Positions 1 through 24,210 of a stretch of 24,210 bases of DNA are shown one piece after another; within the stretch, counting starts at the first letter, position 1, and each line of letters begins with the position of its first letter. Position numbers and translations under genes: made by a program. Under the pieces are notes generated by a model that was not told the origin of the DNA, did no database searches, and saw only the letters and a program-made list of their open reading frames with translations. The stretch is from the IMG/VR virus record IMGVR_UViG_3300016457_001310, positions 1 through 24,210 of that record. The stretch is one strand, 5' to 3'.

Positions 1-166
1 ATGCTTTCCCCTCATACACTTCCATCGGAACAGCCTTATCTATAGCAGCAAGCATTGCGAAGGTAACGTCTTCAGTGGGGTACTCTAGGTGCTCTCTAGT
101 GACGCTCCTGAGTGGGTGGTCTATCGGAACCTTAAGCCTGTGGTAATCGAGCACTAGGTCGGGCAC
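1..166 (-). CDS. Partial ORF running off the window; N-terminus resembles the 463-aa fibre-like protein (possible paralog)
   Basis: Not in the ORF track. Manual translation from GTG at 166, with GAGGTG RBS upstream: MPDLVLDYHRLKVPIDHPLRSVTREHLEYPTEDVTFAMLAAIDKAVPMEVYEGKA..., open to the window edge. Shares V-x-R-x-x-LE-x-P...A-x-L-x-A-x-x-KA with the ORF at 1468-2859. Confidence 0.7.
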   Translation of the reverse strand, partial: MPDLVLDYHRLKVPIDHPLRSVTREHLEYPTEDVTFAMLAAIDKAVPMEVYEGKA

Positions 167-190
167 TGCTCAGCACCTCTGTGTAGTGGT

Positions 191-559
191 TTAGACGCTG
201 CCCATTATCTCCTCTATGAATCCGTAGGGGAAGCTTCTGAGTGTGCCCTGTGTCTGGGTTATCGTAACCCTGTACTTCATCGAGGCTAGCAGGGTCTTTG
301 TATGGAACCTGATGACTGGGTTGCCCAGCGGGCCAGAGAAGTCTGTGCAGATGAACTTCTGGTAGTTCTGACCATCAACAGCGATGTACTCGCACACCGT
401 CACAGCATCACCCTCAGCAAGCTGGGAGAGATCTATGTATCCCTCCACCAGGTAGTCATCGTCGTTGGGCCCGAGCTCGACAACCGTTGTCTCGGTGTTG
501 AGATCCGATGGGGATACGGTTCCGCTGTACCTGTTCTTGGTCTGGATAACTATAGGCAT
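191..559 (-). CDS. 122-aa beta-rich putative structural protein, paralog B of 5085-5453
   Basis: Gap-free alignment to the ORF at 5085-5453 with about 60/122 identities counted by hand. GGTGA RBS. Beta-strand-like alternating pattern. Confidence 0.85.
   Translation of the reverse strand: MPIVIQTKNRYSGTVSPSDLNTETTVVELGPNDDDYLVEGYIDLSQLAEGDAVTVCEYIAVDGQNYQKFICTDFSGPLGNPVIRFHTKTLLASMKYRVTITQTQGTLRSFPYGFIEEIMGSV
224..272 (+). repeat. 49-bp perfect direct repeat, copy 1
   Basis: GTAGGGGAAGCTTCTGAGTGTGCCCTGTGTCTGGGTTATCGTAACCCTG is identical to 5118-5166. It encodes RVTITQTQGTLRSFPY on the minus strand. Confidence 0.95.
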
Positions 560-661
560 CTAGGGATCACCGTGCTGGCTGGGGTCGTCGAGCAGTATCT
601 CAAGCCCGCAGATCACGATAATAAGAAAAATGATTGCGTATACGAGGAGCAGCGGATTCAT
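560..661 (-). CDS. 33-aa single-pass membrane micro-protein
   Basis: Not in the ORF track. MNPLLLVYAIIFLIIVICGLEILLDDPSQHGDP*. GGTGG RBS upstream. Stop codon abuts the ATG of the next gene at 559 and the ORF fills the gap. Confidence 0.65.
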   Translation of the reverse strand: MNPLLLVYAIIFLIIVICGLEILLDDPSQHGDP

Positions 662-675
662 ATATATATCCACCG

Positions 676-876
676 CTAGCGCTGGGGTGGCTCCGACCTC
701 TCGTCGGATGGACGCTTCCTGAAGTAGAAGAAGACCACTGTCTGCGCCAACACGATGAGCGCGCCTATAACCTGGTCGGGTAGCCTTATCAGCCCAGCTC
801 CGTGAGCTATGAAGCTACCGATGATCGAGCCCCATATCATCACGGCGAACACGTTCCTGAAGCTCGTCCTCACCAC
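676..876 (-). CDS. Small two-TM membrane protein, holin-like topology
   Basis: Two hydrophobic segments (VFAVMIWGSIIGSFIAHGAGLI; VIGALIVLAQTVVFFYF) followed by a charged tail RKRPSDERSE. Start overlaps the stop codon of the upstream hydrolase gene. Confidence 0.7.
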   Translation of the reverse strand: MVRTSFRNVFAVMIWGSIIGSFIAHGAGLIRLPDQVIGALIVLAQTVVFFYFRKRPSDERSEPPQR

Positions 877-1418
877 GGTTTCACCACCCTCGTTACATAC
901 CTAACCCAGCCCAGTCCATATATATAGAAGTGCCTGTCCCAAGTTGGTATTGCTACTTCCTGGGTCTGAGGCTCGAAGAGGATCGGTATTATCCTAGACT
1001 GCCAGTAGTCCATGCACTCCGCTGGATCCTCAGAGATGCAGTACAGAGCCACGTTATAGGCGTGGTACCCCAGGAACTCGCCCCTCTCATCAACTATCTT
1101 CCCACCAGTTTCAAACATGCAGTTGAAGCCCAGCAGAGACGCCACGACCTTTGCGAGGGCACTGAAATCATCGCAATCAATCAATCCTCTGTAGGTAAAG
1201 CCGTACTCCTCCTTTATCCTCCTAAACACCCTCAGGAACTCGACGAACGCGCTGGGGGTGAAGAAGTTGAACCAGTTGTCGACACCTATGGCAACACCAT
1301 CGTCGTAGAAAGCAACGTTCTGCCACACACCCCTACCGTAGTATTGCTCTATCAGTTGTTTCACCACGCTATCGTGGAGATAGTACTGGAACTGATAGGA
1401 TCCCATACGGAGAGACAT
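870..1418 (-). CDS. Papain/transglutaminase-like cysteine hydrolase (DCDDF...HAYN...EPQ type)
   Basis: Ordered motifs DCDDFS, GYHAYNV and LFEPQT give a Cys-His-Glu triad like the papain-like C-terminal domain of MOA-type agglutinins and related phage proteins. Confidence 0.75.
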   Translation of the reverse strand: MSLRMGSYQFQYYLHDSVVKQLIEQYYGRGVWQNVAFYDDGVAIGVDNWFNFFTPSAFVEFLRVFRRIKEEYGFTYRGLIDCDDFSALAKVVASLLGFNCMFETGGKIVDERGEFLGYHAYNVALYCISEDPAECMDYWQSRIIPILFEPQTQEVAIPTWDRHFYIYGLGWVRYVTRVVKPW

Positions 1419-1467
1419 GATCCCGCCATAAAAGTGTATAGATTGCGAGGCTATAACACTAACGCCA

Positions 1468-2859
1468 TTACCACCCCAACTTCAGCACCTTACGAAGTTT
1501 ATCGATGTGCTTATCTCTTTCCTCAGTAAGCACAGACACTCTCTCCAGCCTCTTAATCCACATGCTTATAGTTTCACGCAACACGTTGTCTGACACATTC
1601 TTCAATTGTGATCTCTGTGGCTCAATCTTATGATCTATAAGGAATCCATAATAGAAATCCGCTACCTGAAATGCCTCAAGTTCAGGTACACCCAACACAT
1701 GATACGCATAATTATCCTTGCCAGCTATCCAATAGGAGAACCTCTTCCTAAATAGACGGTATTGTTCAACAGCTTCCCTATAATCTCTCGGTGGTCTAAT
1801 AGCCATTAGACCCCTTGCTTTAGCATACTCAACCTGTCTAAGTACTGCTCCCTGGCGATACGGATTATCCCTAGTAATAACTATCAGCATGTTAGTCTCT
1901 CCCTCCCTGTAGTCAAAGGCTCCCCACGATACTGATGCAATATCTATCTGATGCTTTGGTATGCGACCAAGTAGATACTCTATCTCCTCATCGGTGAAGC
2001 CCTTAGATCGAAGCATTCTGTACCTCTTAGCCTCTACAGCCACATGCGGAGGAACGCTGTGCAGTGTTGGGTCAACCTCTCTCAGATCGCTAACTAGGAG
2101 CGGTCTAAATGGCTCGTTCACACCGTCACCAGCAACCTCAGCCTCTATCACAGCTACTGCGTTGGGTAGTTGCGAGGCAACGTCTCTGATCATACCGAAG
2201 TCTATTGCGTAGCTATCGCCCGAATAGTAGTAGTTACCGAAACGACCAGAGGAGATGCTAGTATCTGTTGCGGATATGGAGCTCCAGGCACATGGATCTA
2301 TGGTGTCGACATCACGAACCTGGCCTGGAGATGATCTACATGACTTCAATGCAGATCCAGATACCTGTAGAGACGCGTGGATAATTCCAGACAAGTCAAC
2401 TGCTTCACTAGCTAACTCGGTTTCTGTGCCATTCACAACCTTATACAGCTTGTGATCCGCTGTAGCTAGCGAAGCATCAAAGTAGTTGTAGTACAGTGTG
2501 TTTACACCGTACCACCTATTGACATTGCATATAAAGTTCGTTGATAGCTTAAATAGCTGAACAACCTTCTTATCCGTTAGAACTGTTTCGTATAATGTAC
2601 CTAGACCAGATCCTCGCTTAGTCCAGATCATCCTTGCATAGGCTTTTCCTAGGGCTCTGAGATACGCTAGTTGCGAAGTAGATGGAACCTCTAGATCAAC
2701 CCTACCCACACCACCATCCTTTATCTTCGCGCTGTCTACCGAGTTGTCACATATCGTTAGCCTCCCATAGGCATCGACACAGATGTACACCTTATCTGCT
2801 ATCATCTTCGCTAGGATCTCCCTGTTCCAGAACCCCACCCGATACTCACCCCGATCCAT
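1468..2859 (-). CDS. 463-aa putative fibre/receptor-binding protein
   Basis: N-terminal DNSVDSAKIKDGGV resembles the 'svtxaKIxDgaV' trimeric fibre repeat. Beta-rich S/G/Y-rich middle region. Located in the fibre cluster. Lower GC than its neighbours. Function is inferred. Confidence 0.6.
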   Translation of the reverse strand: MDRGEYRVGFWNREILAKMIADKVYICVDAYGRLTICDNSVDSAKIKDGGVGRVDLEVPSTSQLAYLRALGKAYARMIWTKRGSGLGTLYETVLTDKKVVQLFKLSTNFICNVNRWYGVNTLYYNYFDASLATADHKLYKVVNGTETELASEAVDLSGIIHASLQVSGSALKSCRSSPGQVRDVDTIDPCAWSSISATDTSISSGRFGNYYYSGDSYAIDFGMIRDVASQLPNAVAVIEAEVAGDGVNEPFRPLLVSDLREVDPTLHSVPPHVAVEAKRYRMLRSKGFTDEEIEYLLGRIPKHQIDIASVSWGAFDYREGETNMLIVITRDNPYRQGAVLRQVEYAKARGLMAIRPPRDYREAVEQYRLFRKRFSYWIAGKDNYAYHVLGVPELEAFQVADFYYGFLIDHKIEPQRSQLKNVSDNVLRETISMWIKRLERVSVLTEERDKHIDKLRKVLKLGW

Positions 2860-6247: not shown

Positions 6248-7369
6248 CTAGTCGGATACTATCTCCACCAGCCTCAGAGCTATGATATCCCATCTATACT
6301 CCTTCGAGAGCACCTTCTCTCTCCATTCCCGTACCCTCGCCTTGTACTCGTCTAGGTTATCCAGGATTACGTGCAACTTGTTGAGAGCGTCCTCGACATC
6401 GACAGCGTAGCCGTAGCCACCGTGAAAGGCGTTTCCTGGTAGGGGCTGAACCCTCCTACCCTTCTTGACCCACAGGAACGGGGGTACGTACTCAGACCAC
6501 GAACCGTACTCGCATGCGAGCACTGGCACACCCCTAGCAAGCGATTCTAGAGCAACCATCTCGAAGCCACCGCCTCGGCTGAACATCAGGGTTACGTCAG
6601 CCATATCGAAGAGCGCCATCTTCTCGTAGTCGCTCAGCCACTCGTATACCTGAAGTGCGCCGTACTGCATGACCTGCTGGTACTCGGGTATGTTGGGGAA
6701 CACCGTCTTCAGGACCAGAGCAACATCCTTCCTCTCCCTAGCAAGCCTGGTATACACCTCGTACACCTCTGGCCAGCCCTTCCTCTCACCGCTGTGGACA
6801 AGGAAGAACAGTATGAACTTCTTGTTCCTCCTCATCTTATAGAGGTAGAGCTGCACAAGCGATGAGCTGAGCCTCTGCCTCGGCGCGATCTCCCATACAT
6901 TGGGTGTTGTATACCACTCAGGGTCGACACCGTGCGGAAGCCTGTAGACCCTAGCCCTCACCCCAGACCTCCTAGCCACCTCCACACAGAAGCTGGAGGG
7001 CACGACGAACTTGTCGAACCTGTTAGCTATGGAGACCGCGTAGTCGGTATACGCATCGGAGTCGCAGACATCTATACCTATGAGCTGGTCGTAGAAGCCC
7101 CTCCACCACTGGTAGTAGTCCTCCCTAAACCTACCCCATATATCCTTCCTGCTCTCAAGAACCCTAAACATGATGAAGAAGCCTGGGTGTAGAATCAGGG
7201 AGTACTTGGTCGATGGCGTGAACGCTGGTACCATAAGCTCGTCGAGCTCGTACACCGACACATACCCAAGCCTCCTCATATACTCCAGATGCTTCCTCGC
7301 CACCAGCGTGAAGCTGACGGTGTGCCACTGAGGATAGGCATAGAGTATCGGCTTCAAGACTAGCCCCAC
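6248..7369 (-). CDS. GT-B fold family 4 glycosyltransferase, archaeal filamentous virus type
   Basis: VVPSSF, LPHGVD, ERKG and FSRGGGFEMVALESLARGVPVL, a variant of the E-x7-E motif with Gly at the first Glu. Confidence 0.9.
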   Translation of the reverse strand: MGLVLKPILYAYPQWHTVSFTLVARKHLEYMRRLGYVSVYELDELMVPAFTPSTKYSLILHPGFFIMFRVLESRKDIWGRFREDYYQWWRGFYDQLIGIDVCDSDAYTDYAVSIANRFDKFVVPSSFCVEVARRSGVRARVYRLPHGVDPEWYTTPNVWEIAPRQRLSSSLVQLYLYKMRRNKKFILFFLVHSGERKGWPEVYEVYTRLARERKDVALVLKTVFPNIPEYQQVMQYGALQVYEWLSDYEKMALFDMADVTLMFSRGGGFEMVALESLARGVPVLACEYGSWSEYVPPFLWVKKGRRVQPLPGNAFHGGYGYAVDVEDALNKLHVILDNLDEYKARVREWREKVLSKEYRWDIIALRLVEIVSD

Positions 7370-8131: not shown

Positions 8132-8425
8132 TCACGTCGGAGGCGCCCAGTGCACGCCTAGAATAGCCGCCACGAAGCTGAGGACTATGACCATAACCGT
8201 TATCATCGCGCCGACAAGAAACTTTATCAAGCCGTTGCGTCTCTCGACAAGCTTGTTTATGAGCCGCTTTATCTCGCTGACATCGTTCTCGATGTTATCG
8301 ACTCGTTGCTCTACCCGTGCTAATCTCTCGCGCATATCCATTACCATGAGCATCAGCTCCCTTATTTCCTGGTTGGGTACGGGATCATTTGAAGCCCCAT
8401 ACTGCGAAGTTCCCTCCCTCGACAT
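8132..8425 (-). CDS. Coiled-coil protein with C-terminal TM helix
   Basis: Heptads MRERLARVEQRVDNIENDVSEIKRLI, then hydrophobic LIKFLVGAMITVMVIVLSFVAAILGV. The start may be downstream of 8425 because it overlaps the MTase by 41 nt. Confidence 0.75.
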   Translation of the reverse strand: MSREGTSQYGASNDPVPNQEIRELMLMVMDMRERLARVEQRVDNIENDVSEIKRLINKLVERRNGLIKFLVGAMITVMVIVLSFVAAILGVHWAPPT

Positions 8426-8951
8426 AGCCCACCCCCCGAAAACCTATCCACTCAAGCAAGCGCTTTAGGGTTTTCGGATGAAGTACATGGAAATGCGTCT
8501 CGTCGCTGAGAGCCGTGGGGTCTGAGCACGTAACAGATTGTATCCACACAGCGCCCCCAGGCTTCAGAACGCGGTACACCTCGGTAAGCGCCTTCACGTA
8601 GTCAACGATGTGCTCAAGAACCTCTATCATGATAACGACATCGAAGCGGTTCGCAGGGAACTCCAGAGCCTCGGCATTCATGATCAGGTGCGGGTAGTCC
8701 TTCCTCCGATCTGGGGGCTCCACGATGTCTATACCCCAGTAGTTCCAAGAGTACTGGGGTCTCGGAAAGTTCTCGTGTAGCCAACCCACGAGAAAGCCCT
8801 TGAAGCAACCCACCTCCAGGATATCGAGGTGCCCGCGCTCCTTGAAGAGCCTCTCTAGGAACTCCTTAAGCTCCTTGCGCCTAACCAGTAGGAAGCCCCA
8901 GTAGTGCTTCTTGCCAGCCTCGATCATCGCGCTCTTCAGCTCCATGGTCAC
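8385..8951 (-). CDS. Class I SAM-dependent methyltransferase (small-molecule/glycan type)
   Basis: ILEVGC-KG motif I, WGIDI, NAEALEFPANRFDVV, EVLEHI, EVYRVLKPGG. No DPPY/NPPY or PC motif of DNA methyltransferases. Confidence 0.9.
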   Translation of the reverse strand: MTMELKSAMIEAGKKHYWGFLLVRRKELKEFLERLFKERGHLDILEVGCFKGFLVGWLHENFPRPQYSWNYWGIDIVEPPDRRKDYPHLIMNAEALEFPANRFDVVIMIEVLEHIVDYVKALTEVYRVLKPGGAVWIQSVTCSDPTALSDETHFHVLHPKTLKRLLEWIGFRGVGYVEGGNFAVWGFK

Positions 8952-13900: not shown

Positions 13901-16900
13901 CTGGAGGTAGAGATCCGCCATCGGTCTAGCCGACGCAGTGGTGCCCTCGGGTATGAGACTCTTGGTTATCTCGTGGATAGCCTTCTTCAGACCGATGCCG
14001 TATGCAGACCAGTAGTCGAAGAGGCCCCACCTTGTCATCCATCTCAGGTCTATCTTGGTGGGTATGTCAGCCATAAGCTCGATCATTATGGCGTTATCGG
14101 TTGGCCACCCAGGTTGCCACGGAAACCTGGCATAGTCATGCCACTTCATGTAGGTGCTGATCATCTTTTGCAACAAATCATATCTGAAGTTCAGCTCCTT
14201 GGGAGCCACAGCCTTCACAACCGTTGGGTCTAGACCGAAGGTCTTCATTATGTTCTCGTCGACTGGTGCCTCAGGGTTCCACAGCTCACCAGCGATACCC
14301 CTCCAGAAGAACTCTGCTAGCTTCTCTGGCGGTGGGTACCTGTAGTGCAGTAAGTAGAACATGAACGCCACGTCTGGCGTGAAGCCGTGCATAGCCATAA
14401 CTGCCGCAAAGTGCCTTGGATCCTGTATGATGTCCCTCACCATCATCCTAGCTAGCTCGCTCGGGCTCGGTATTGCCCACACCATCGATACTGGGAAGAG
14501 CCTCTCCTTCCTGGTGTATGACGTAAACCTATCCCATATCCTCAGAGCCCCCAGCTCCCTATCGTAGAGCTCGGATACATTGCCGAGTTGCTTAGCGACC
14601 TCCTCAGCGAGCTTGGTATTGAGACCATAGATCCTCTCTATAAAGCCCTTGTAGATACCACCCATCCTGAGCTGGTCTACAAACATCTTGTAGTTGTCCA
14701 TGAGTATCGGTGTCGGTATAGACCTCCTAACCAAGTTGAGAGTGTGCTCCATTGGTGGAAGCTCGACGGTTACGTACTCGGTCAGGTTGTACCTAGTGAT
14801 TGCCCTGGTTGGCTCGGCCCACCATATCATGTGGCCTATGATCATGTACCTCGCTACGTCTGGCATGAACTTCTCGAACTGCGAAACAGCCTTCTCAAGA
14901 ACGTCCTTCAGCTTCAGTCTTATCCTAGCACCGACACCGAGTGGCTCACCACTTATCTCGGTATCTGGTAACGCAGATACCAAGGGCTTCAGTATGAGGC
15001 CAACACCGTAGATGGCGGCCGATATCAGCACGCCAACGTTGAGCAGGTTGTATATGAACCTCACGGGGTTCTTCTTGGCCTCCTCTATCACCTCGCCGAG
15101 CTTCTCGACCATTATCGGTGTGAGCGGTAGTAGTATAGCCTCGATTATGGGGAACCATGGAGACGCAAGTATCTCGTAGAGCGCTGGGCTAGACCTAGCC
15201 ACTATCAGGTTGGTTATAGCCTTCATAGCGTTGCCGATAGCTGTAGCGATATCCTTACCGACCTCTCCAATAACCGAGATAACAGTCATTACAGCTCTGC
15301 CTACCCACGAAGCAAGCGTCTTAAATGCCGAGACAAACCAGTTACCGAGTCCCGTCAGGATGTTCCATAGCCACTGCGCACCCTCGACGATCTTCTGTCC
15401 GATCCACTGTAGAGAGTTCCAAACTGTCGTTACTAGCCTCTCTGGTAGCTGCATAACCGCGTTCACGAAGCCAGTGAGGTAGACACCCACCAGCTTCAGG
15501 TTCTCAGACACCTTGGTAAGAGCCTCGCCTAGCTTCGCGAAGCCCTCGCTTACCAGCGTTCCGAGCTTGGTCAGGTAGTCCCACAGTGATATGCCTACCT
15601 CTCTAAGCGTCCCGAAGACGATCTGCGGAATCCTCTGGATCTCCTCAACAACACCGCTTACCAGCGACGGGAACTGCTCGGTGAAGAACCTAGCCACCGT
15701 CTCCAGTCCGCTCCTAACCATGTCTAGGAACTGGGTGAACGCCTCGGTAATGGGCTTCACAACGTTCTCGCTGATCCACGTGCCTAGACCAGCTACCGCC
15801 TCCTTTACCTGGTCTACGAGGCTCGGAAGCGTCTCGGCTATGAAGCTCCTAACGGTCTCGAACCCCTCGGAGATGAAGCCGATCAGGTTCTCAAGAGCGC
15901 CCCTAAGCGGGGCGAGCACGTTGCTCTGGATGAAGCTCCATATACCCGCTAGGGCGCTCTGGATCTGGCTAACCATGCTAGCGATAGCCGACGATACGCT
16001 TCCGAGACCCTGCTGAACCGCTGATAGGATGCTCTGCACAGCCGATGTTAGAGGCGCGATAACGTTCTGCTGGATCCACGAAGCGATCCCCGCAACAGCA
16101 TCGCGGAGCTGAGCAACGAAACTATTGATGTAGCTCGGCAACTCCTCGGTGAAGAACCTAGATACGGTCTGTAGACCGCTGTTGATGAAGTCTATGAAGC
16201 TCTGGAAAGCCGCTGTTAGGGGTGCTACAACGTTCTCCTGTACCCAGGTAGCTATTCCAGATAGCGTCTGCTGTATAGACGCAATAGCCTGGCTTACGAA
16301 TGCTGGTAGCTCCTCGGTGAAGAACCTGGAGACCGTCTCCAGACCGCTACTAATTAGCTGTATCAACTGGCTAAACGCGTTGCTCAGCGGTGCAACAACG
16401 TTCTCCTGGATCCAGGTGGCTAGCTCACCAACAGCTTGCTGAACCATCGCTGGTATCTGCGACACAAAGCTCGTCACGGTGTCGAGACCGCGTGTAATCG
16501 TCTCTATCAGGTTATTTACAGCGGTTAGCAGGGGTGTGACCACATAGTCGTTTATCAGCGTGCTGATGTCGCTTATCCATTTCTGGAGCTCCGCAAACAT
16601 CTGCGGAACGGTCTCGGTGAAGAACGTCGTTAGCGTCGATATGCCCTGGCTGATCCAGCTCATCAGGTTGTTAATAGCGCTGAACAGCGGGTCGATTATG
16701 TCCTCCTGTATCCAGCTCCATACACCGCTTATCTGGCGACTTAGCCAATCCAGAGCGTTCTCAACCGTGCCTGGTATCTGCTGTAGGAAGCTCCACACCT
16801 GCTCAACGAGGTTCTTGATCGTGTCGAGGAACGGCTTAGCTACCGTGTCCCAGAGCCTGCGACCTATCTCCTCGACCGTCTGAGCAAACCAGGAGGCGAG

Positions 16901-17158
16901 CTCGCTCATACGGTCGTAGAGCCACTGCTGTAGCTGTCCAATCGGGTCGGTGATGCCGTGCTCCGAGGTAACGAGAGCCTCTAGATCGAGCTCCTCTAGA
17001 TCCCTGATAACCGTTACGGTGAAGACCTCCTCGATACCCTTGCTCCACCTAAGCTCCCATAGACCAGCCGCGCTGAGAGTAGCCGCTAGGTACTTAGCGT
17101 CCTCGGCGGTGAAGAGCTCCAGCCTCTGATGGCTGGTCACAGCTACACCCGAGAACAA
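10910..17158 (-). CDS. Giant (about 2080 aa) virion terminal-structure/fibre protein with tape-measure-like N-terminus and C-terminal helical repeats
   Basis: Uninterrupted 6.2-kb ORF. Residues ~70-660 carry amphipathic W/F-periodic repeats (WIQENVVAPL...GLETVSRFFTEELP). The C-terminal third has ~6 repeats starting P(S/T)PxxLAxLAEY, several with YGFTxxEI. The GTG at 17140 (RBS GGGTG) is an alternative start. Confidence 0.85.
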   Translation of the reverse strand: MFSGVAVTSHQRLELFTAEDAKYLAATLSAAGLWELRWSKGIEEVFTVTVIRDLEELDLEALVTSEHGITDPIGQLQQWLYDRMSELASWFAQTVEEIGRRLWDTVAKPFLDTIKNLVEQVWSFLQQIPGTVENALDWLSRQISGVWSWIQEDIIDPLFSAINNLMSWISQGISTLTTFFTETVPQMFAELQKWISDISTLINDYVVTPLLTAVNNLIETITRGLDTVTSFVSQIPAMVQQAVGELATWIQENVVAPLSNAFSQLIQLISSGLETVSRFFTEELPAFVSQAIASIQQTLSGIATWVQENVVAPLTAAFQSFIDFINSGLQTVSRFFTEELPSYINSFVAQLRDAVAGIASWIQQNVIAPLTSAVQSILSAVQQGLGSVSSAIASMVSQIQSALAGIWSFIQSNVLAPLRGALENLIGFISEGFETVRSFIAETLPSLVDQVKEAVAGLGTWISENVVKPITEAFTQFLDMVRSGLETVARFFTEQFPSLVSGVVEEIQRIPQIVFGTLREVGISLWDYLTKLGTLVSEGFAKLGEALTKVSENLKLVGVYLTGFVNAVMQLPERLVTTVWNSLQWIGQKIVEGAQWLWNILTGLGNWFVSAFKTLASWVGRAVMTVISVIGEVGKDIATAIGNAMKAITNLIVARSSPALYEILASPWFPIIEAILLPLTPIMVEKLGEVIEEAKKNPVRFIYNLLNVGVLISAAIYGVGLILKPLVSALPDTEISGEPLGVGARIRLKLKDVLEKAVSQFEKFMPDVARYMIIGHMIWWAEPTRAITRYNLTEYVTVELPPMEHTLNLVRRSIPTPILMDNYKMFVDQLRMGGIYKGFIERIYGLNTKLAEEVAKQLGNVSELYDRELGALRIWDRFTSYTRKERLFPVSMVWAIPSPSELARMMVRDIIQDPRHFAAVMAMHGFTPDVAFMFYLLHYRYPPPEKLAEFFWRGIAGELWNPEAPVDENIMKTFGLDPTVVKAVAPKELNFRYDLLQKMISTYMKWHDYARFPWQPGWPTDNAIMIELMADIPTKIDLRWMTRWGLFDYWSAYGIGLKKAIHEITKSLIPEGTTASARPMADLYLQYLKKGEIVFDLKQFCRVLQATGIHPYWIPWVAIAETINALTEERTLLRTGFINLYKEGIWSLDHLHQLLSGFFTVKFEVGYFDLEKRDWVSATVEYPIAFLPAESKLLEIRATMDRALDIYREAYRYIIRSVAYYVVDPAKAREIIADIVSAINEKFFKQTVKSLTGKELSLVLDTGYWEAWSKYAEAIIELEARERTRFYARYLLWSVLWALRYGYVTIDEAKGWVSKLVEKMHEHPIVREAIELSVEFMVYRFEREVKAKAIINLLRSRRIAVSEAIEQLKKLGFSEDLAKKYIDANVVWYTPGLTTYATLLEIVPEAISTSLKALEHFNMPSDELQYWRLYVARKPIQDELTLLRTRIYNALALGMGIDEVVDILSKYSMKFTVRGGELVIEGADEAKKLLAFYDANRDVFQAFGIAPHEWVMYNVIAAFERRIDELRQAARERIPSPSTLAVLAEYLALPKDLVEEALKRYGVSEKWREIWEKYIEVKPLKSDYKAYISVAIRAYLRNVIEKKRLDEIIDKAKEYGFTDEEIKILRDRIDLEEKLEEAKVRIPTPSQLATLAEYIVLPEDKVLSALKYHRVADEWIDYWKKYIEAKPIKSDVKSLLSVKIRALRYGVITKKELEEFIDKLGQYGFTSKEIEFIKERVDLEEEIAEAMELRRAYLPTPTMLATLAEYLVLKEDLIRKVLEARRVPQEWIDIWLKYIQVRPVKSDYKAVLSVAARALRYGVISEDEWKKLLDDAKSYGFTPKEIELIEKRVYYELLIESAREYVPSLGTIASMVEYIEVPRTIIDRVLQLRRVPKDFADLWLRYIEARSIAGEVNQLVAEYRRLYEYFTVSREVASKVAEWMRKGGWVGKELEVFSLALQLRKEYRVLSWLVPTIRQLVADARYIPEWEQILSDVLRARGIDVARYQKQIEYYKKLARNRIVWRQIAWYRNRLVYAYANGIIDRNTLIQKLQALKKYGLTDDEIALIVDGAELEKKRIQTIYGR

Positions 17159-17746: not shown

Positions 17747-18793
17747 TCAACCCCCGTATGAGAACATTGCTAGGAACTCCCTATAAGTCTTCCGCATATC
17801 GAACTCGCGAGCTCTTTCCAGACACCTAGCCCTAACCTCGTCGCGGTTCTTAAGCACGTAGTCCTTTGCATATATAATCATCTCCGCGAAGTCCTTGGGG
17901 TCGTAGTAGTGCAACTCGTAGTCTATGGCACCTATCTCCGACCTGTATACAACGCTCCTCACCCTAACCCTGAAGCTGGTATCCTTCGTCGTTACCTCGC
18001 TCAGGGGCTCGTAATCAGCGTGCACAACTGGCTTGCCAGCCGCAAGAGCTTCTAGAACGGGATATCCGAAGCCCTCGGCTAGGGATGGCTGTGCATAGAG
18101 ATCGAAGCTGTGTAGAAGACCGTAGTACTCGTCCTCGCTCAGCTTGCCGAACTGGTCGATCAGTATAACGTTGTCAACACCGCTGTACTTCTCAACACCC
18201 TTGGAATCCGTTAGAACCACGAACTTTATCGACGGATCCCTATCGTGTACAAGCCTTATCACCTCAGCAAAGACATCGTGACCCTTACGCATGTAGCCAC
18301 CAGCTATGTACCCAACAACGAAGTCATCGTCTTTGAGACCCAGCTCCCTCCTAACGTACCTAGCCCTCCACCCGAACGCGCCAACAGCATCGATATCTAT
18401 ACCGTGGTAGACCACCTTGGTAACCGTTGCCCCAGCCTCCCTCAGCTTACTCATCGTGTACCGAGAGTTAGCGACAAAGCTGAGATCCCTATAGATCCAG
18501 GCATCGCCGTGAACGCGCCTAGCCCTCCCCTCTATAGTTGTGTAGAACACGCACTTCTTTCCGTACACAAGCATCTCCCTGCACACGAAAGCGAATGGAG
18601 ATACCCACGCTGGGTCGAAGGTCATCACAACGAGCACGCCGTCGACATCCTTGTAGACCTCTGGATCGGCATTGGGGTAGCCGAGGATATCCTTGACATT
18701 GACACCGCCCTCCCTGAGAACCGTAGCAACGTCGTTCGCTACGCGCTTAAGCGATGCGGATCTATGAGAAGTTAACACGATTACGCTAACCAT
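17747..18793 (-). CDS. GT-B fold family 4 glycosyltransferase
   Basis: FVANSRYT, VVYHGID, MRKG, and PSLAEGFGYPVLEALAAGKPVV with a canonical E-x7-E. Directly downstream of the capsid genes. Confidence 0.93.
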   Translation of the reverse strand: MVSVIVLTSHRSASLKRVANDVATVLREGGVNVKDILGYPNADPEVYKDVDGVLVVMTFDPAWVSPFAFVCREMLVYGKKCVFYTTIEGRARRVHGDAWIYRDLSFVANSRYTMSKLREAGATVTKVVYHGIDIDAVGAFGWRARYVRRELGLKDDDFVVGYIAGGYMRKGHDVFAEVIRLVHDRDPSIKFVVLTDSKGVEKYSGVDNVILIDQFGKLSEDEYYGLLHSFDLYAQPSLAEGFGYPVLEALAAGKPVVHADYEPLSEVTTKDTSFRVRVRSVVYRSEIGAIDYELHYYDPKDFAEMIIYAKDYVLKNRDEVRARCLERAREFDMRKTYREFLAMFSYGG

Positions 18794-18869: not shown

Positions 18870-19244
18870 TTAGTACGGTGGTACGGCTCCTATGAGTGCC
18901 TCTATGATCCTGTCGAGCACTGCTGGATCGCACTTGTAGGCCGTTACGAAGTAGCTCTTGATGCCGCTAACCTCCTTCTGGAGTGTTAGACCGCTGTGGC
19001 TGAACATTGTCTTAGCTACTATCTGCGCGAAGGCTAGATAGGGAGCCCATAGACCAGTTGGCACACCCTCTTCGCTCAGGATGTTCCTAGCTACCTCCAC
19101 AGCGTTGTATATGGCGGCAGTAGCGCTCTCGAACCTAGCCTCCATAATGGGCTTGACAGCCGTCAGCCTGTTGGTCACGTTGGTACCGTCGTACTTAGCC
19201 TCGTACTTGGCTCTCATATCACCTAATCTCTTAACGATGGGCAT
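18870..19244 (-). CDS. Major capsid protein 2, SIRV2-like (Adnaviria) fold
   Basis: AKYEAKY...NILSEEGVPTGLWAPYLAFAQIVAK...SGIKSYFVTAYKCDPAVLDRIIEALIG matches the rudivirus MCP pattern as I recall it (AKWQAKF...VLTQYGITGPNRAIYQGFGLKVAR...NGLKGYYISAFNANPQVLDAVVNIITG). Strong GGGGGTGA RBS. Confidence 0.88.
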   Translation of the reverse strand: MPIVKRLGDMRAKYEAKYDGTNVTNRLTAVKPIMEARFESATAAIYNAVEVARNILSEEGVPTGLWAPYLAFAQIVAKTMFSHSGLTLQKEVSGIKSYFVTAYKCDPAVLDRIIEALIGAVPPY

Positions 19245-19270: not shown

Positions 19271-19627
19271 TTATCCAACTATCAGGTTCGCGATCTTGTC
19301 TAGTATAGCGGGGTCGGCACCCTTAGCAACGAACCACTGCTTGAGACCGCTGGCAATCGCTTGCAGGTCAGCACCCTCGTGGCTCAGAGCCTTGCTTGCT
19401 AGCTTCATCGCGAACGCGTAGTAGACACCGTGGAACCCTGCTGGAACACCCTCGCTCTCAAGTATGTTCCTAACGCGCTCCCTGACAGCCGCCATCACGC
19501 CGCTGCCCTCGATGTACCTAGTCACAGCGATGTCCTTTACCGCACCGTATCTAGTACCTGTCTGATCTGGTGGTGTCTTTGCCTTGAACTTCTCTACTCG
19601 GTCTGCAAGGGTCTTGACTATGGGCAT
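19271..19627 (-). CDS. Major capsid protein 1, SIRV2-like (Adnaviria) fold
   Basis: Paralog of MCP2: shared MPIVK-L-D start, RNIL--EGVP-G, Y-AFA, SH-G--LQ, SG-K--FV and DPA-LD-I. Confidence 0.88.
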   Translation of the reverse strand: MPIVKTLADRVEKFKAKTPPDQTGTRYGAVKDIAVTRYIEGSGVMAAVRERVRNILESEGVPAGFHGVYYAFAMKLASKALSHEGADLQAIASGLKQWFVAKGADPAILDKIANLIVG

Positions 19628-19664
19628 AGGTACCTACCTCGATGCTCAATTCGGGCACGAAGCG

Positions 19665-19672: not shown

Positions 19673-19727
19673 CGTAGTATGTAATAGAGAGCGTCTGGAG
19701 CTGTATCGCAGTGCTGGTGGTTCGGGT

Positions 19728-20264: not shown

Positions 20265-20277
20265 GGAGGACTGAGCC

Positions 20278-20616: not shown

Positions 20617-20636
20617 CAAACACCGTTTTTCACCTC
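20617..20636 (+). terminator. Oligo-T terminator
   Basis: CAAACACCGTTTTTCACCTC immediately after the stop, followed by a pyrimidine-rich tract. Confidence 0.55.
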
Positions 20637-20714
20637 CCTATTCTCTCCCCTAGGGGCTGTGACCGAAAGGCTTATTAGTGTACACCCCCTAGTGGGTATC
20701 TGGGATGGCACACC

Positions 20715-21245: not shown

Positions 21246-21310
21246 ATTCTCGATTGCTTCGCTATCCCAGAGCGGGGGATATCCATGCGCTCTTAAACAC
21301 TCAAGAAAAA

Positions 21311-21380
21311 TCGAAACTCAGTTACGATATTTGTAACATATTGAATATGTTATATAGAGAGATACTAGACTGAGTTTCGA
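21311..21380. repeat. Nested inverted repeats in an AT-rich non-coding region
   Basis: Outer perfect 12-bp arms TCGAAACTCAGT (21311-21322) and ACTGAGTTTCGA (21369-21380). Inner perfect 9-bp arms TAACATATT-G-AATATGTTA (21334-21352). Confidence 0.9.
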
Positions 21381-21586
21381 GTGCCATTGCTTTCTTAACC
21401 TCCCCCTACGTCCGTGGGGAGTGCGCTGGACTTTTCTCTATGGAGAGAAGGGTATATCCCCCGAAAGTGTTGCATAGGAATTGAGGGGTCTGATTTGCGT
21501 GACCCCCTAACAGGTTTAGAACCTTATTTAGTAACCAGCTAGTGAGATTGAAAGGTTTGAGGAGAGGTATACTTATATAATCTTCC

Positions 21587-22339
21587 TTGTCATATATAAG
21601 AAGAGGGATCAGAACAGTGCTCACTCATCACATGCAACAAAACATCGTCTCAGTATACGGTCTCATCACCAAGTTGTTCTTACAGTATCTTAGAAAGTAT
21701 ATAAAAGTTGTTGGTAAACAAGTGGTTGTCCATCAGATGCCTAGGCATAAGACCACCTTTATCCTGGTGCCACTATCGTTTGATGAGGAGCGCTACTGGT
21801 TCTTCGTTCTGATAGCCTCGGATTCTAAAGATCCTTGGAGCCCCAAGGAGGTGTGGCAAAGGATACTGAGAACGTACTTCTCAAGGTTCTATCCATGGAT
21901 AAGGCAGATCATGGGAAGCAGTGCGTTTAGATACATCGAGGGAGGTACAGTCCTCTACATAGGTGCGATCTCTCGCGGGTGCTATAGCTTCGGTGGAAAG
22001 GAGATAGAGCCTAACGTGATGCTGTTCACGAGGGATATAAGGAACTTGATACGGTGGCTACGGACGTGGAACCCAACAAAGATAAAGGAGTTCTTCGGGG
22101 ACTTCGTCTCCGCGTTTGAGGAGTTTTCTTTCCGCCTTGCACAGCAGGTGAAACACGTTTTCTCTGCTCTTCGTAAGCTCTTCGCTGATAAGGCTGAGCT
22201 CATCGAGCGCAAATCGAGGATGAAAGACGTTGAGCCATATGGCCCAGTGAAGCAGAAGATAGTGATGCTGAAGACCCTGAGCGAGGTGTTCGAAGAGCTA
22301 GTTAGGTACGCATGTGGAAAGCCAGTTGTTGTAATGTGA
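21587..22339 (+). CDS. Hypothetical protein; true start probably 21722 or 21737, about 200 aa
   Basis: Long ORF. The 5' part is AT-rich and contains a BRE/TATA-like AGAAAGTATATAAAA near 21692-21706, which suggests a start at the in-frame GTG 21722 or ATG 21737 (MPRHKTT). Confidence 0.7.
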   Translation: MSYIRRGIRTVLTHHMQQNIVSVYGLITKLFLQYLRKYIKVVGKQVVVHQMPRHKTTFILVPLSFDEERYWFFVLIASDSKDPWSPKEVWQRILRTYFSRFYPWIRQIMGSSAFRYIEGGTVLYIGAISRGCYSFGGKEIEPNVMLFTRDIRNLIRWLRTWNPTKIKEFFGDFVSAFEEFSFRLAQQVKHVFSALRKLFADKAELIERKSRMKDVEPYGPVKQKIVMLKTLSEVFEELVRYACGKPVVVM

Positions 22340-22352
22340 CATATGGTGGTGC

Positions 22353-22883
22353 GTGAGCATGTCTGGGTTGGAACACCTTAGGAACCTGATCTCTAGGCTT
22401 GAGGAGCTGGAGAAGCGTAGGTGTAGAGCGGTGTACATGAAGGGATTCAGCGCGGGGATAGTCATCAGGACGCTGCTGGAGAGGTTTAGGGCTGTTGAGG
22501 CGGCTCTCAGCGGTGAGGATACATCGGAGGGTGTCTGCACGGAGCTGGCGAACTTCATCAGGTTCCTAGGCAACGCGCACTGGCGTAACGGGGTTCTCGA
22601 AACCGACTGCTTCGTCACCGTGACCATGGACGTGCCCCTGTTGATGAAGGAGGTGTTCGTGCGCTACGTAACGCTGTGCGGCTACAGGGATAGGGAGGCT
22701 CTGGAGGTGGCTAGGAGGGTTCTGGGCATAGAGAGCGTCTCGGAGCTACGTAGGAAGGTAAAGAAGAAGAAGCGTAGAAAGATAAGGGAGGAGGAGGTAG
22801 AGGCTAGCTCGGAGGTTGATACCGAAGAAGTGGTTGAAAGCGATGTAGAGTATGCTTCAGAGGATGTCGAGGTAGTTAGCTGA
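22353..22883 (+). CDS. Hypothetical protein with basic patch and acidic C-terminal tail
   Basis: GGTGGTG RBS. RRKVKKKKRRK is followed by an E/D/V/S-rich tail. Confidence 0.8.
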   Translation: MSMSGLEHLRNLISRLEELEKRRCRAVYMKGFSAGIVIRTLLERFRAVEAALSGEDTSEGVCTELANFIRFLGNAHWRNGVLETDCFVTVTMDVPLLMKEVFVRYVTLCGYRDREALEVARRVLGIESVSELRRKVKKKKRRKIREEEVEASSEVDTEEVVESDVEYASEDVEVVS

Positions 22884-22892
22884 AAACGTTTC

Positions 22893-23318
22893 TCAGATGA
22901 TCTCGGATAGCTTTTTGGCTCGGTCGAACATCTGTTTTGTGATTACGTACCTAACGCCTTTCTCCCACTGTTGCTTCTCAAGAACCTCAAGTGGGAATAC
23001 GTACCACTGCTTCTCTTCCGAGACCCTGACCGCTATGTATGCCTCTCCCCCTGCTCTCCTAGCGAAGTTCTCCAGCATCCACACCTTGGGCGCGGCGAGG
23101 TATATCGCGTCTCTATGTTTCCTGAGCTTAACCTCGAAGACCAGAACCCTGTACCTAGAACCATCGAACTTAACAGCGAAGACATCTGGATAGAAAACCC
23201 TTCTTGTCTTAGCACCAGAGGCGGGGGCTCTCATTACTGCATACCCTGCTCTTCTAAGCTTCTTAACCAGCTCCAGCTCAGCTTGCTTACCCCTTCGATA
23301 GAAGCTCATTTCCAGCAC
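22893..23318 (-). CDS. hjc: Archaeal Holliday junction resolvase (Hjc family, PD-(D/E)xK)
   Basis: RRGKQAELELVKKLRRAGYAVMRAPASG...YPDVFAV...VFEVK...LENFARRAGG-AYIAVR...W is the full Hjc motif set. Confidence 0.93.
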   Translation of the reverse strand: MLEMSFYRRGKQAELELVKKLRRAGYAVMRAPASGAKTRRVFYPDVFAVKFDGSRYRVLVFEVKLRKHRDAIYLAAPKVWMLENFARRAGGEAYIAVRVSEEKQWYVFPLEVLEKQQWEKGVRYVITKQMFDRAKKLSEII

Positions 23319-23543
23319 CTACTCTATGTAGTCGTCGTACAGAATTAGATACACGTATTCCTCGCATCTCCCTAGGTTCTCCTCTATCCTCTTCCTGAAA
23401 TCCTCGTGGGGGCTGAAGATGATGACCCATCGAGGGTACCGCCTCTTCATGTACTCCAACAGCTCCTCCCAGCTCCCGAACCTGAGGTATATAGTTTCAT
23501 CCGTCGACGCTATATCTATACGTGCACAGAGCACCATAAACAC
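23319..23543 (-). CDS. Hypothetical protein of about 72-74 aa
   Basis: Abuts hjc. GGTAGGTG RBS before the ATG at 23537. Ends with LILYDDYIE. Confidence 0.7.
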   Translation of the reverse strand: MFMVLCARIDIASTDETIYLRFGSWEELLEYMKRRYPRWVIIFSPHEDFRKRIEENLGRCEEYVYLILYDDYIE

Positions 23544-23625
23544 CTACCTACTCTACCTATCGCAACACTCCTTGGCTAGGTGCCTGAGGACGCGTCTGAG
23601 AACCATGGTCATCAACCTGAGCGCT

Positions 23626-23802
23626 CTATTCACATACCCTCTCTAGATCGGCTATTCTTCTTCTAATCCTATTGATCTCGCTCTTCAGCCTATACTTCCT
23701 CTGCTTCAACATCCTGATCTCCCGCTCCACCTCGCGTAGCTGGTTCTCCAGCATCTCCAGCTTCCTTTTGAGGATATCGTAGTCCATACATGTGCTCATC
23801 AT
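23626..23802 (-). CDS. 58-aa basic coiled-coil protein
   Basis: Not in the ORF track. MMSTCMDYDILKRKLEMLENQLREVEREIRMLKQRKYRLKSEINRIRRRIADLERVCE*. Starts immediately after the stop of the upstream gene. Confidence 0.7.
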   Translation of the reverse strand: MMSTCMDYDILKRKLEMLENQLREVEREIRMLKQRKYRLKSEINRIRRRIADLERVCE

Positions 23803-24210
23803 CTAGCTCGCCTCCCGCACCTCGCGTATTATGTCGGTTATCGGTATGTAGAGCCTGAGGACGGGGTACGTAGGCTTCTTGCTGGTTTCGTCGCTTGGTG
23901 TGGGGAGCTTCTTCGGCACCATGTGAAGCACGAGACCGTAGACCGATCTCCGCGGCTCTTCGAGCTCTACCCAGTCCAGCCTCGGCACAGTTATGAACAG
24001 CGCGTGGTTCTCAACGAACCTCTCCAGCTCCCTTAGGCTGGAGAACCTGAGGACAGCGTCTGCAACCCTATCCATCCGCGCGCTGTAGCTCTCCACCTTC
24101 TTGGTCAGCTCGTTGACGAACTCGCTTACGTAGCTCTGGAGCCTCTCGTAGCACTCCTTGCATAGGTAGAGATGGTAGTAGTCGGGTGGGTAGGCACCTG
24201 GTTTGTACGC
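23803..24210 (-). CDS. Partial hypothetical protein with a CxxC motif; 5' end outside the window
   Basis: The frame of track ORF 23803-24096 stays open to the window end: ...AYKPGAYPPDYYHLYLCKECYERLQSYVSEFVNELTKKVES... Confidence 0.75.
   Translation of the reverse strand, partial: AYKPGAYPPDYYHLYLCKECYERLQSYVSEFVNELTKKVESYSARMDRVADAVLRFSSLRELERFVENHALFITVPRLDWVELEEPRRSVYGLVLHMVPKKLPTPSDETSKKPTYPVLRLYIPITDIIREVREAS

What the first reader, a model, noticed from the sequence alone, without database searches (positions are those of the whole stretch)
1..24210. Apparently complete absence of the tetranucleotide CCGG
Seen: reading through the CCG trinucleotides in the window by eye (a few hundred), I found none followed by G. 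About 95 CCGG sites would be expected at uniform composition (24210/256). Other palindromes (GATC, CTAG, AGCT, GCGC, CGCG, TCGA) are common and GGCC is present. Inference: strong selection by a host restriction system recognising CCGG (HpaII/MspI-like). Even the low-GC fibre gene complies, which suggests a shared host gene pool. This could be used to identify the host.
Basis: seen in the sequence. Interest (0 to 1): 0.65.

Follow-up and report, generated by a model that had tools for sequence, protein, structure and literature searches.

The report
Archaeal rod virus with no CCGG
This 24-kb piece of a rod-shaped archaeal virus from a deep-sea vent has removed every CCGG site, and several other short palindromes, by its choice of synonymous codons; this is the classic mark of escape from host restriction enzymes, and many of its relatives share it, but the host and the enzyme remain unknown.

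Summary
CCGG occurs 0 times in 24,210 nt. The expected count is 117 from base composition, 86 from dinucleotide shuffles, 50 from a second-order Markov model and 43.5±5 (minimum 27) from synonymous-codon shuffles.

The loss comes from context-dependent codon choice. Pro CCG is never used before a G-starting codon (0/87, against 75/205 elsewhere). NCC is never used before Gly (0/64, against 370/1418). CGG is never used after an NNC codon (0/115, against 28/430).

CCGG is not alone: GGCC, GGNCC/GGWCC, GCWGC, CTCGAG, CAGCTG and CTGCAG are also depleted or absent.

The window is an incomplete genome of a rudivirus-like virus (realm Adnaviria) from a hydrothermal vent metagenome. Sixteen contigs including the window (about 243 kb; some are near-duplicates) have 0 CCGG against about 333 expected. 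Each has its own further missing sites, and other relatives keep CCGG. The trait changes at least 4 times on the tree.

The best explanation is avoidance of the sites of host Type II restriction enzymes, a known strategy. The enzyme and host were not found: there were no spacer hits, no HpaII or MspI family genes, and no CCGG-poor genome among about 90 sampled.

This is a new member of a known kind, of moderate interest.

The parts
1..24210 (.). The whole window is free of CCGG. It is also depleted in GGCC, GGNCC/GGWCC and GCWGC, and it has no CTCGAG, CAGCTG or CTGCAG.
   Evidence: About 92% of the window is coding. The roughly 1.9 kb of non-coding DNA also has 0 CCGG, against about 8 expected at zero order.
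10910..17158 (-). A 2082-aa minor structural / terminal-fibre protein, a homologue of the large rudiviral protein. It is the largest single contributor to the deficit: 13.8 CCGG expected, 0 seen.
   Evidence: phrog_7334 at 8e-58. tblastn matches the 'minor structural protein' of rudiviruses SSRV1, ARV2/3 and MRV1 at about 23% identity.
18870..19244 (-). SIRV2-like major capsid protein, paralogue 1 (124 aa).
   Evidence: Pfam PF12193 Sulf_coat_C at 1e-12. It is 25-30% identical to Rudiviridae coat proteins. There are 41 metagenomic homologues.
19271..19627 (-). SIRV2-like major capsid protein, paralogue 2 (118 aa).
   Evidence: PF12193 at 9e-12 and PF21660 MCP_C.
17747..18793 (-). GT4 glycosyltransferase next to the capsid genes, a conserved synteny in all relatives.
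   Evidence: PF00534 at 1e-14 and phrog_2170. Synteny is shown.
22893..23318 (-). Archaeal Holliday-junction resolvase (Hjc). It is the only recognisable nuclease in the window.
   Evidence: PF01870 at 2e-21.
8385..8951 (-). Class I SAM methyltransferase of the UbiE/UbiG type. It is not a recognisable DNA methyltransferase, so the window shows no means of protecting itself by methylation.
   Evidence: Methyltransf_23/11. NCBIfam gives only weak UbiE/UbiG/ArsM-type hits. The sequence has no (D/N/S)PP(Y/F) or PC-type DNA-methyltransferase motif. There is a weak PADLOC mad2 hit at 5.5e-11.
1468..2859 (-). Its lack of CCGG is not significant on its own.
   Evidence: The shuffle expectation is 1.93 with P(0) = 0.11. 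No family was found. It is 40% identical to an ORF of the distant relative G399:C142.
6248..7369 (-). A second GT4 glycosyltransferase (373 aa).
   Evidence: phrog_2170 at 1e-40 and PF00534.
23803..24210 (-). An ORF that runs off the right end of the window, so the genome is incomplete.
   Evidence: Contigs from public runs continue at least 468 nt and at least 2170 nt past position 24210. The relative L190 continues about 3 kb further. No terminal inverted repeats were found.

Best explanation
The window is part of the linear dsDNA genome of an uncultivated rod-shaped archaeal virus from a deep-sea hydrothermal vent (realm Adnaviria, rudivirus-like). Its lineage has been selected to carry no CCGG at all because its host or hosts have a restriction activity that cuts unmethylated CCGG. 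One site is enough for cleavage, so any genome that gains a site is lost. Sites are kept out by synonymous codon choice: CCA/CCC/CCT replaces CCG before G, NCT/NCA/NCG replaces NCC before Gly, and AGG/AGA/CGY replaces CGG after NNC. The same passive strategy acts, completely or partly, against further Type II-like sites (GGCC/GGNCC, GCWGC, CTCGAG, CAGCTG, CTGCAG). The strategy is general in this virus group, and the set of avoided sites tracks the changing restriction repertoire of the hosts. What is shown: the absence, its independence from codon usage and protein sequence, its recurrence in relatives, and the lack of a recognisable DNA methyltransferase in the window. What is inferred: that the selecting agent is a host Type II restriction endonuclease, and that agent's identity.
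For: (1) The window has 0 CCGG against 43-117 expected under four nulls.
(2) Codon choice depends on context. Pro CCG is used 0/87 times before a G-starting codon and 75/205 times elsewhere. NCC is used 0/64 times before Gly and 370/1418 times elsewhere. Arg CGG is used 0/115 times after NNC and 28/430 times elsewhere. The amino-acid pairs are present and only the DNA word is avoided.
(3) The other strongly depleted words are also short palindromes typical of orthodox Type II sites. Non-target palindromes (GATC, GCGC, CGCG, TCGA, AGCT) are at normal frequency.
(4) Sixteen contigs including the window, with GC 0.39-0.55 and about 243 kb in total, have 0 CCGG against about 333 Markov-expected. 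Each has its own extra missing sites: L019 lacks GCGC, CGCG, TCGA, GGWCC and GCWGC; L024 lacks GATC and GGCC; L021 lacks GTAC and CGCG; G253:C117 is depleted in GGWCC and GATC. Other relatives (L005, L013, L023, L025, L027, L028, G399:C142) have normal CCGG but avoid other sites, for example GGWCC 0/157.
(5) The state changes at least 4 times on a tree built from MCP1, MCP2 and the glycosyltransferase, including between the close relatives L025 and L026. This is what host-dependent selection predicts.
(6) The window has no DNA methyltransferase.
[quoted passage not shown] CCGG-specific m4C methyltransferases are recorded in vent archaea, for example M.MjaVI of Methanocaldococcus jannaschii and Methanotorris igneus, and GCWGC m5C methyltransferases are widespread in Thermoproteota (PMC11033074, Table 1).
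Against: No host and no cognate enzyme were found.
- There was no CRISPR-like hit in 351 + 120 + 401 genomes.
- The HpaII family was absent from 471 genomes. The MspI family was absent from 351, although for MspI no control genome gave a hit either, so that search is uninformative.
- The MAG bins that hold related viral contigs have normal CCGG. So do 90 sampled genomes of two crenarchaeal classes, with observed/expected 0.54-2.09.
- Cultivated Crenarchaeota are reported to be generally poor in restriction-modification systems (PMC10609329).
- The replacements favour transitions at the inner C (CCA|G, NCT|GG), which is also what methyl-cytosine deamination would produce.
- The genome is incomplete, so a DNA methyltransferase or other factor may lie outside the window.
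Confidence: 0.8

Rival explanations
1. Mutational decay without restriction. A host or viral methyltransferase makes m5C at CCGG, and at high temperature m5C deaminates to T so fast that CCGG is lost by mutation pressure alone, giving CTGG/CCAG or TCGG/CCGA.
For: The replacements are biased toward transitions at the inner C. Before G-starting codons Pro is CCA in 51 of 87 cases. Before Gly the third base is T in 38 of 64 cases. CTGG, CCAG, TCGG and CCGA are all above expectation.
Against: Total absence (0 against about 333 expected over about 243 kb in 16 contigs) would need the methylated C to mutate roughly 100 times faster than ordinary bases. That figure is my own estimate from about 1170 one-step neighbour words in the window. 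A host with such a methyltransferase should itself be CCGG-poor, and none of about 90 sampled genomes is. The archaeal CCGG methyltransferases on record make m4C, not m5C (PMC11033074). Part of the excess of neighbour words follows arithmetically from CCGG being 0. Transitions are the commonest mutations in any case, so selection would also fix them preferentially.
Confidence: 0.1
2. A virus-encoded CCGG-specific nuclease, used to degrade host DNA or exclude competing viruses, forces the virus itself to stay free of CCGG.
For: CCGG is the site most often missing across the whole virus group, whatever the GC content. Many window proteins have no known function.
Against: No window gene is present only in CCGG-less relatives. 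All conserved genes also occur in relatives with normal CCGG. The only recognisable nuclease is Hjc, which is also present in the CCGG-containing relatives L013, L022 and G399:C142. This rival does not explain the many other avoided sites that differ between lineages. No family search gave a restriction-enzyme-like hit.
Confidence: 0.05
3. The absence is due to chance, codon bias, or an assembly or sequencing artefact.
For: None beyond the prior. Strong codon bias exists in the window (AGG for Arg, few AAT/ATT).
Against: None of 2000 codon-preserving shuffles gave fewer than 27 sites. The same absence is seen in independently assembled contigs from JGI, ENA, NCBI and Logan and from several vent fields.
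Confidence: 0.01

Closest known systems
Restriction-site (palindrome) avoidance in genomes of phages and archaeal viruses (surveyed by Rusinov et al. 2018, PMC6286503)
   Same: Short palindromic, Type II-like words are eliminated completely or nearly so. The loss is achieved by synonymous changes, there is no self-methylation, and the set of avoided sites differs between related viruses.
   Different: The host and the cognate enzymes are unknown here. The trait is shared by many uncultivated relatives spanning GC 0.39-0.55. It was not previously described for Adnaviria in the papers I could search.
CCGG restriction-modification systems (HpaII, MspI; archaeal M.MjaVI, which makes m4C at CCGG, in Methanocaldococcus jannaschii; PMC11033074 Table 1)
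   Same: The target word is CCGG. Archaeal examples come from deep-sea vent hyperthermophiles, which share the virus's habitat.
   Different: No HpaII-family or MspI-family endonuclease was detected in 471 and 351 crenarchaeal genomes respectively. The window's GC of 53% and its normal CTAG, GATC and GTAC counts do not fit the M. jannaschii repertoire. The enzyme family remains open.
Rudiviridae / Ligamenvirales and other Tokiviricetes (Ahmunviridae of ANME-1, bioRxiv 10.1101/2022.07.04.498658; Chiyouviridae of Bathyarchaeia, PMC10848311; Demeterviridae and Gaiaviridae of Caldarchaeales, bioRxiv 10.1101/2025.08.23.671958)
   Same: It has two adjacent SIRV2-like capsid genes beside a glycosyltransferase, a P1070-like giant fibre protein, Hjc, and a UbiG/UbiE-like SAM methyltransferase.
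   Different: Capsid identity to classified Rudiviridae is only 25-30%. The GC content is 53%. It comes from a marine vent. No terminal repeats are present in the contig. Membership of any named family was not tested.

Membership tests
Anti-restriction by recognition-site avoidance | The site is significantly under-represented against compositional expectation. | tested here: met
   0 sites against 117 (zero order), 86 (dinucleotide shuffles) and 50 (Markov), z = -8.7.
Anti-restriction by recognition-site avoidance | The deficit is not explained by protein sequence or codon usage. | tested here: met
   Synonymous shuffles give 43.5±5.1 with a minimum of 27. Codon choice depends on context.
Anti-restriction by recognition-site avoidance | The avoided words are short palindromes of the orthodox Type II kind, and non-target palindromes are at normal frequency. 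| tested here: met
   CCGG, GGCC, GGNCC, GCWGC, CTCGAG, CAGCTG and CTGCAG are depleted. GATC, GCGC, CGCG, TCGA and AGCT are normal.
Anti-restriction by recognition-site avoidance | The host encodes a restriction endonuclease of that specificity. | tested here: inconclusive
   The host is unknown. No spacer hits were found. PF09561 gave 0/471 and PF09208 gave 0/351. Restriction endonucleases are too diverse for absence of these families to be shown this way.
Anti-restriction by recognition-site avoidance | The avoidance varies with lineage or host among related viruses. | tested here: met
   At least 4 state changes on the tree. Each relative has its own set of avoided sites.
HpaII/MspI-like restriction-modification system as the selecting agent | An HpaII-family (PF09561) or MspI-family (PF09208) endonuclease is present in candidate host genomes. 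| tested here: not met
   0 of 471 and 0 of 351 genomes. The MspI search had no positive control. The true host lineage may not have been searched.
Adnaviria / Tokiviricetes rod-shaped viruses | A SIRV2-like alpha-helical major capsid protein. | tested here: met
   PF12193 on two adjacent ORFs and tblastn hits to rudiviral coat proteins.
Adnaviria / Tokiviricetes rod-shaped viruses | A large terminal-fibre / minor structural protein homologous to SIRV2 P1070. | tested here: met
   phrog_7334 at 8e-58 and rudiviral 'minor structural protein' hits.
Adnaviria / Tokiviricetes rod-shaped viruses | A linear genome with inverted terminal repeats. | tested here: inconclusive
   No terminal inverted repeat is present in the window, but the contig is incomplete at least at its right end.
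Adnaviria / Tokiviricetes rod-shaped viruses | A rod-shaped virion holding A-form DNA. | not testable with these tools
   No virion has been observed.

The most novel reading that the evidence does not exclude
The CCGG-free state is imposed not by the host but by the viruses themselves. Under this reading, a virus-encoded CCGG-specific nuclease among the many unannotated proteins destroys host or competitor DNA, so the lineage must stay free of the site. A milder novel reading is that a widespread CCGG-specific restriction activity of an unrecognised enzyme family exists in uncultured vent archaea.
Probability: 0.05. Interest if true: 0.8.

Novelty: new member of a known kind. Interest (0 to 1): 0.42.

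Why it matters
Restriction-site avoidance is textbook biology, so the single observation is not new. Three things add value.

First, the case is unusually clean. No sites are present, and codon choice in three reading-frame contexts shows directly that the DNA word, not the protein, is under selection.

Second, the signature extends to a whole group of uncultivated vent Adnaviria, each with its own list of forbidden palindromes. These viruses therefore rely on passive site loss and face hosts with rich and changing Type II restriction repertoires. This contrasts with reports that cultivated Crenarchaeota are poor in restriction-modification systems.

Third, the avoided-site list (CCGG, GGNCC, GCWGC, CTCGAG, CAGCTG, CTGCAG) is a testable fingerprint. 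It could be used to match virus to host once methylomes of vent metagenomes are available.

Tried and rejected
- **CRISPR spacers.** I used BLAST of the window against 351 genomes (class of G001), 120 (class of G003) and 401 (phylum sample). Only related viral contigs and short coding or low-complexity matches came back. None lay in a repeat array.
- **Restriction enzyme families.** PF09561 (HpaII) gave 0/471 and PF09208 (MspI) gave 0/351. For MspI no control genome gave a hit, so that search is weak.
- **Host genome signature.** I sampled up to 20 kb from 73 + 17 genomes. CCGG observed/expected was 0.54-2.09, so there is no candidate.
- **MAG bins holding related viral contigs** (G001, G002, G003, G212, G253, G387, G399). 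Their other contigs have normal CCGG, and G002 and G003 look chimeric. Binning gives no reliable host.
- **Close DNA or protein relatives in the phage collection and IMG/VR, using the 582-aa protein.** None were found.
- **tRNA genes** as integration or host clues. None were found.
- **A virus gene that tracks CCGG-lessness.** None was found among the window's genes.
- **A DNA methyltransferase in the window or just beyond its end.** None was found. The 188-aa methyltransferase is of the small-molecule type, and the relative L190 shows none in the next 3 kb. The relative L001 has a partial C5-methyltransferase-like gene in a region the window lacks.
- **A module shared between the low-GC gene and the giant ORF.** Only a short GFTDEEI motif is shared.
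- **L188, a contig with a 73% identical Hjc.** It has normal CCGG and a different gene content, so it was not counted as a relative.


Full report
**1. The observation**

CCGG does not occur in the 24,210-nt window, and it is the only tetranucleotide that is absent. The window has 53.0% G+C, 287 CCG, 254 CGG and 1444 CG.

| Null model | Expected CCGG |
|---|---|
| Base composition (zero order) | 117 |
| 100 dinucleotide-preserving shuffles | 86.5±9.4 |
| Maximal-order Markov model | 50.5 (z = -8.7, the most extreme of all 4-mers) |
| 2000 shuffles of synonymous codons within each of 28 gene models (92% of the window), keeping every protein and each gene's codon usage | 43.5±5.1, minimum 27 |
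| Second run of 600 codon shuffles | 43.2 |

The finding is real and is not a by-product of composition or codon bias.

**2. How the site is kept out**

The amino-acid pairs that could encode CCGG are common: there are about 612 synonymous opportunities. The codons are chosen so that the word never forms.

| Context | Count in that context | Count elsewhere |
|---|---|---|
| Pro CCG before a codon starting with G | 0 of 87 | 75 of 205 |
| NCC codons of Ser/Pro/Thr/Ala before Gly | 0 of 64 | 370 of 1418 |
| Arg CGG after a codon ending in C | 0 of 115 | 28 of 430 |

This shows directly that the nucleotide word is under selection. The replacements favour CCA before G and NCT before Gly, which are transitions at the inner C.

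The non-coding 1.9 kb also has no site, against about 8 expected at zero order. Per gene, only the giant ORF (13.8 expected) and a few others are individually significant.

**3. CCGG is not alone**

Against the codon-shuffle null, these words are depleted or absent:

| Word | Observed | Expected |
|---|---|---|
| GGCC | 23 | 58 |
| GGNCC | 15 | 59 |
| GGWCC | 5 | 37 |
| GCWGC | 15 | 46 |
| CTCGAG | 0 | 16.7 |
| CAGCTG | 0 | 10.5 |
| CTGCAG | 0 | 7.5 |
| CGTACG | 0 | 5.3 |

GATC, GCGC, CGCG, TCGA, AGCT, GTAC and CATG are near expectation, and CTAG is over-represented. The profile is a set of short palindromes of the orthodox Type II kind.

**4. What the window is**

The assembly holding the window is the window itself. 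It encodes:

- two adjacent SIRV2-like capsid proteins (PF12193);
- a GT4 glycosyltransferase next to them;
- a 2082-aa protein related to the large minor structural / terminal-fibre protein of rudiviruses;
- an archaeal Holliday-junction resolvase;
- a second glycosyltransferase;
- a phosphodiesterase-like protein;
- a UbiE/UbiG-type SAM methyltransferase.

The nearest classified viruses are Rudiviridae at 25-30% capsid identity. It is therefore a distant, uncultivated member of the rod-shaped archaeal viruses (Adnaviria, Tokiviricetes).

Public runs that hold it are hydrothermal vent metagenomes from one study. Their contigs continue at least 468 nt and at least 2170 nt past the right end. 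A relative at 83% identity continues about 3 kb further. No terminal repeats are present. The genome is therefore incomplete.

I found no DNA methyltransferase. The 188-aa methyltransferase lacks DNA-methyltransferase motifs, although it gives a weak PADLOC mad2 hit.

**5. Relatives**

The capsid protein has 41 metagenomic homologues. I fetched their contigs, further ones from IMG/VR, and contigs from species-representative genomes.

These contigs have no CCGG (observed/Markov-expected):

| Contig | CCGG |
|---|---|
| L015 | 0/14 |
| L001 | 0/15 |
| L190 | 0/10 |
| L019 | 0/8 |
| L020 | 0/11 |
| L012 | 0/13 |
| L007 | 0/11 |
| L010 | 0/17 |
| L031 | 0/37 |
| L077 | 0/24 |
| L030 | 0/4 |
| L021 | 0/12 |
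| L024 | 0/8 |
| L033 | 0/5 |
| G253:C117 (47 kb, distant relative) | 0/94 |

With the window this comes to about 243 kb and about 333 expected sites, across G+C from 0.39 to 0.55. Some pairs are near-duplicates, so these contigs are not all independent.

Each lineage has further missing words of its own:

- L019 lacks GCGC, CGCG, TCGA, GGWCC and GCWGC.
- L024 lacks GATC and GGCC.
- L021 lacks GTAC and CGCG.
- L007 and L010 lack GCGC and CGCG.
- G253:C117 is depleted in GGWCC and GATC.

Other relatives keep CCGG at normal density: L005 26/20, L013 142/137, L023, L025, L027, L028 and G399:C142 329/395. They avoid other sites instead, such as CTCGAG 0/14 in L013 and GGWCC 0/157 in G399:C142. Intermediate cases also exist (L026 2/11, L076 18/45).

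On a tree of MCP1, MCP2 and the glycosyltransferase, the CCGG-less state holds for 11 of the 13 members of the window's clade. It needs at least 4 changes overall, including one between the close relatives L025 and L026. No window gene is present only in CCGG-less relatives.

**6. Explanation**

Several features point the same way:

- The loss is all-or-none.
- Only the DNA word is avoided, not the amino acids.
- The other victims are palindromic.
- The avoided set is lineage-specific and changeable.
- There is no self-methylation.

Together these are the expected marks of avoidance of host Type II restriction sites, a documented strategy of prokaryotic viruses (PMC6286503). CCGG-specific archaeal methyltransferases that make m4C are recorded in vent methanogens, for example M.MjaVI. 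GCWGC m5C methyltransferases are widespread in Thermoproteota (PMC11033074, Table 1). I put this explanation at 0.8.

**7. What remains unshown**

I could not find the host or the enzyme.

- BLAST of the window against 351, 120 and 401 genomes of Thermoproteota gave no match inside a repeat array.
- The HpaII family is absent from 471 genomes. The MspI family is absent from 351, but no control gave a hit for it.
- The MAG bins that hold related viral contigs have normal CCGG elsewhere.
- 90 sampled genomes of two crenarchaeal classes have CCGG observed/expected of 0.54-2.09, and almost no avoided palindromes at all. This fits the report that Crenarchaeota are poor in restriction-modification systems (PMC10609329).

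The host may therefore lie outside the lineages I could sample. Adnaviria have been assigned to ANME-1, Bathyarchaeia and Caldarchaeales as well as to Crenarchaeota (bioRxiv 10.1101/2022.07.04.498658; PMC10848311; bioRxiv 10.1101/2025.08.23.671958). Alternatively, its restriction-modification system may be too young to have shaped its own genome; the title and abstract of PMC4687349 state that the lifespan of a system matters for this. The label 'HpaII/MspI-like' is thus unsupported as a statement of family membership, though not as a statement of specificity.

**8. Rivals**

- **Mutational decay through m5C deamination (0.1).** It fits the transition-biased replacements. It is hard to reconcile with zero sites in about 243 kb, with the m4C chemistry of the known archaeal CCGG methyltransferases, and with the lack of CCGG-poor genomes.
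- **A virus-encoded CCGG nuclease (0.05).** The evidence does not exclude it, but no gene tracks the trait, and it would not explain the other avoided sites.
- **Chance or artefact.** This is excluded by the shuffles and by independent assemblies from several sources.

**9. Verdict**

Two side remarks are wrong or carry no weight: GGCC is not unaffected, and the low-GC gene is not informative.

This is a new and very clean member of a known kind of phenomenon. The family-wide pattern and the missing host enzyme give it moderate interest.

Noticed in passing
window 191-559 (-) and 5085-5453 (-); repeat 218-272 / 5112-5166: Two paralogous 122-aa genes are only 49% identical in protein sequence, yet they share a 55-nt block that is 96% identical and encodes ...RVTITQTQGTLRSFPY.... 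This may be gene conversion or a strongly constrained segment. Homologues occur in the distant relatives G253:C117 and G399:C142.
   Followed up: partly
window 10910-17158 (-): The 2082-aa fibre-like ORF holds two series of internal repeats. One has a period of 168/300 nt at about 15669-16722. The other has a period of 324-336 nt at about 11412-12475, and its units carry a GFT(D/S/P)(E/K)EI motif. That motif also occurs once in gene 1468-2859.
   Followed up: partly
whole window: CTAG (146 against 111), CCTA/TAGG (286 against 193), CCTAGG (11 against 5) and TACGTA (17 against 7) are over-represented against codon shuffles. AAT and ATT are strongly under-represented, which explains the low AATT count (8). 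No explanation was sought.
   Followed up: no
L020 vs L031; all relatives: Relatives with capsid proteins 50-70% identical to the window's span G+C from 0.36 to 0.67. The sister contigs L020 and L031 differ by 10 points (0.44 against 0.54). Base composition changes fast in this group.
   Followed up: no
L001:1688-2440 (+): A relative with 88% capsid identity carries a 250-aa gene with the N-terminal half of a C5 cytosine DNA methyltransferase (PF00145; TIGR00675 at 3.5e-14, below its cut-off). It lies in a region near Hjc that has no counterpart in the window. This relative also lacks CCGG and nearly lacks GGCC.
   Followed up: partly
G399:C142 (L073-L075), 52.9 kb, GC 0.67: This GC-rich distant relative has normal CCGG but no GGWCC at all (0 against 157 expected) and depleted CCSGG (29/143).
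   Followed up: no
G002 (Thermoprotei archaeon B83_G16): L045, L046, L047: The MAG looks chimeric, with contigs of GC 0.36, 0.61 and 0.45. Two of them show extreme avoidance of their own: GATC 1/54 in one and GGWCC 0/39 in the other. Some vent organisms, not identified here, therefore do purge restriction sites from their own genomes.
   Followed up: no
window 8385-8951 (-): The UbiE/UbiG-type SAM methyltransferase, which is conserved in L031 (72%) and G253:C117 (55%), gives a PADLOC hit to mad2 of the methylation-associated defence system (5.5e-11). It has no DNA-methyltransferase motifs, and its substrate is unknown.
   Followed up: partly
L022:9800-15201: This relative has only 6 CCGG sites (10 expected), and all of them lie in one 5.4-kb stretch of an 18.5-kb locus. 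The pattern would fit a recently imported segment.
   Followed up: no
window 18211-24210 laid on runs X3, X4: Two of the four runs hold a diverged strain, with many substitutions and replaced segments, for example 21223-22374 replaced by 1843 other letters. The accessory region between the capsid genes and Hjc is variable within the population.
   Followed up: no
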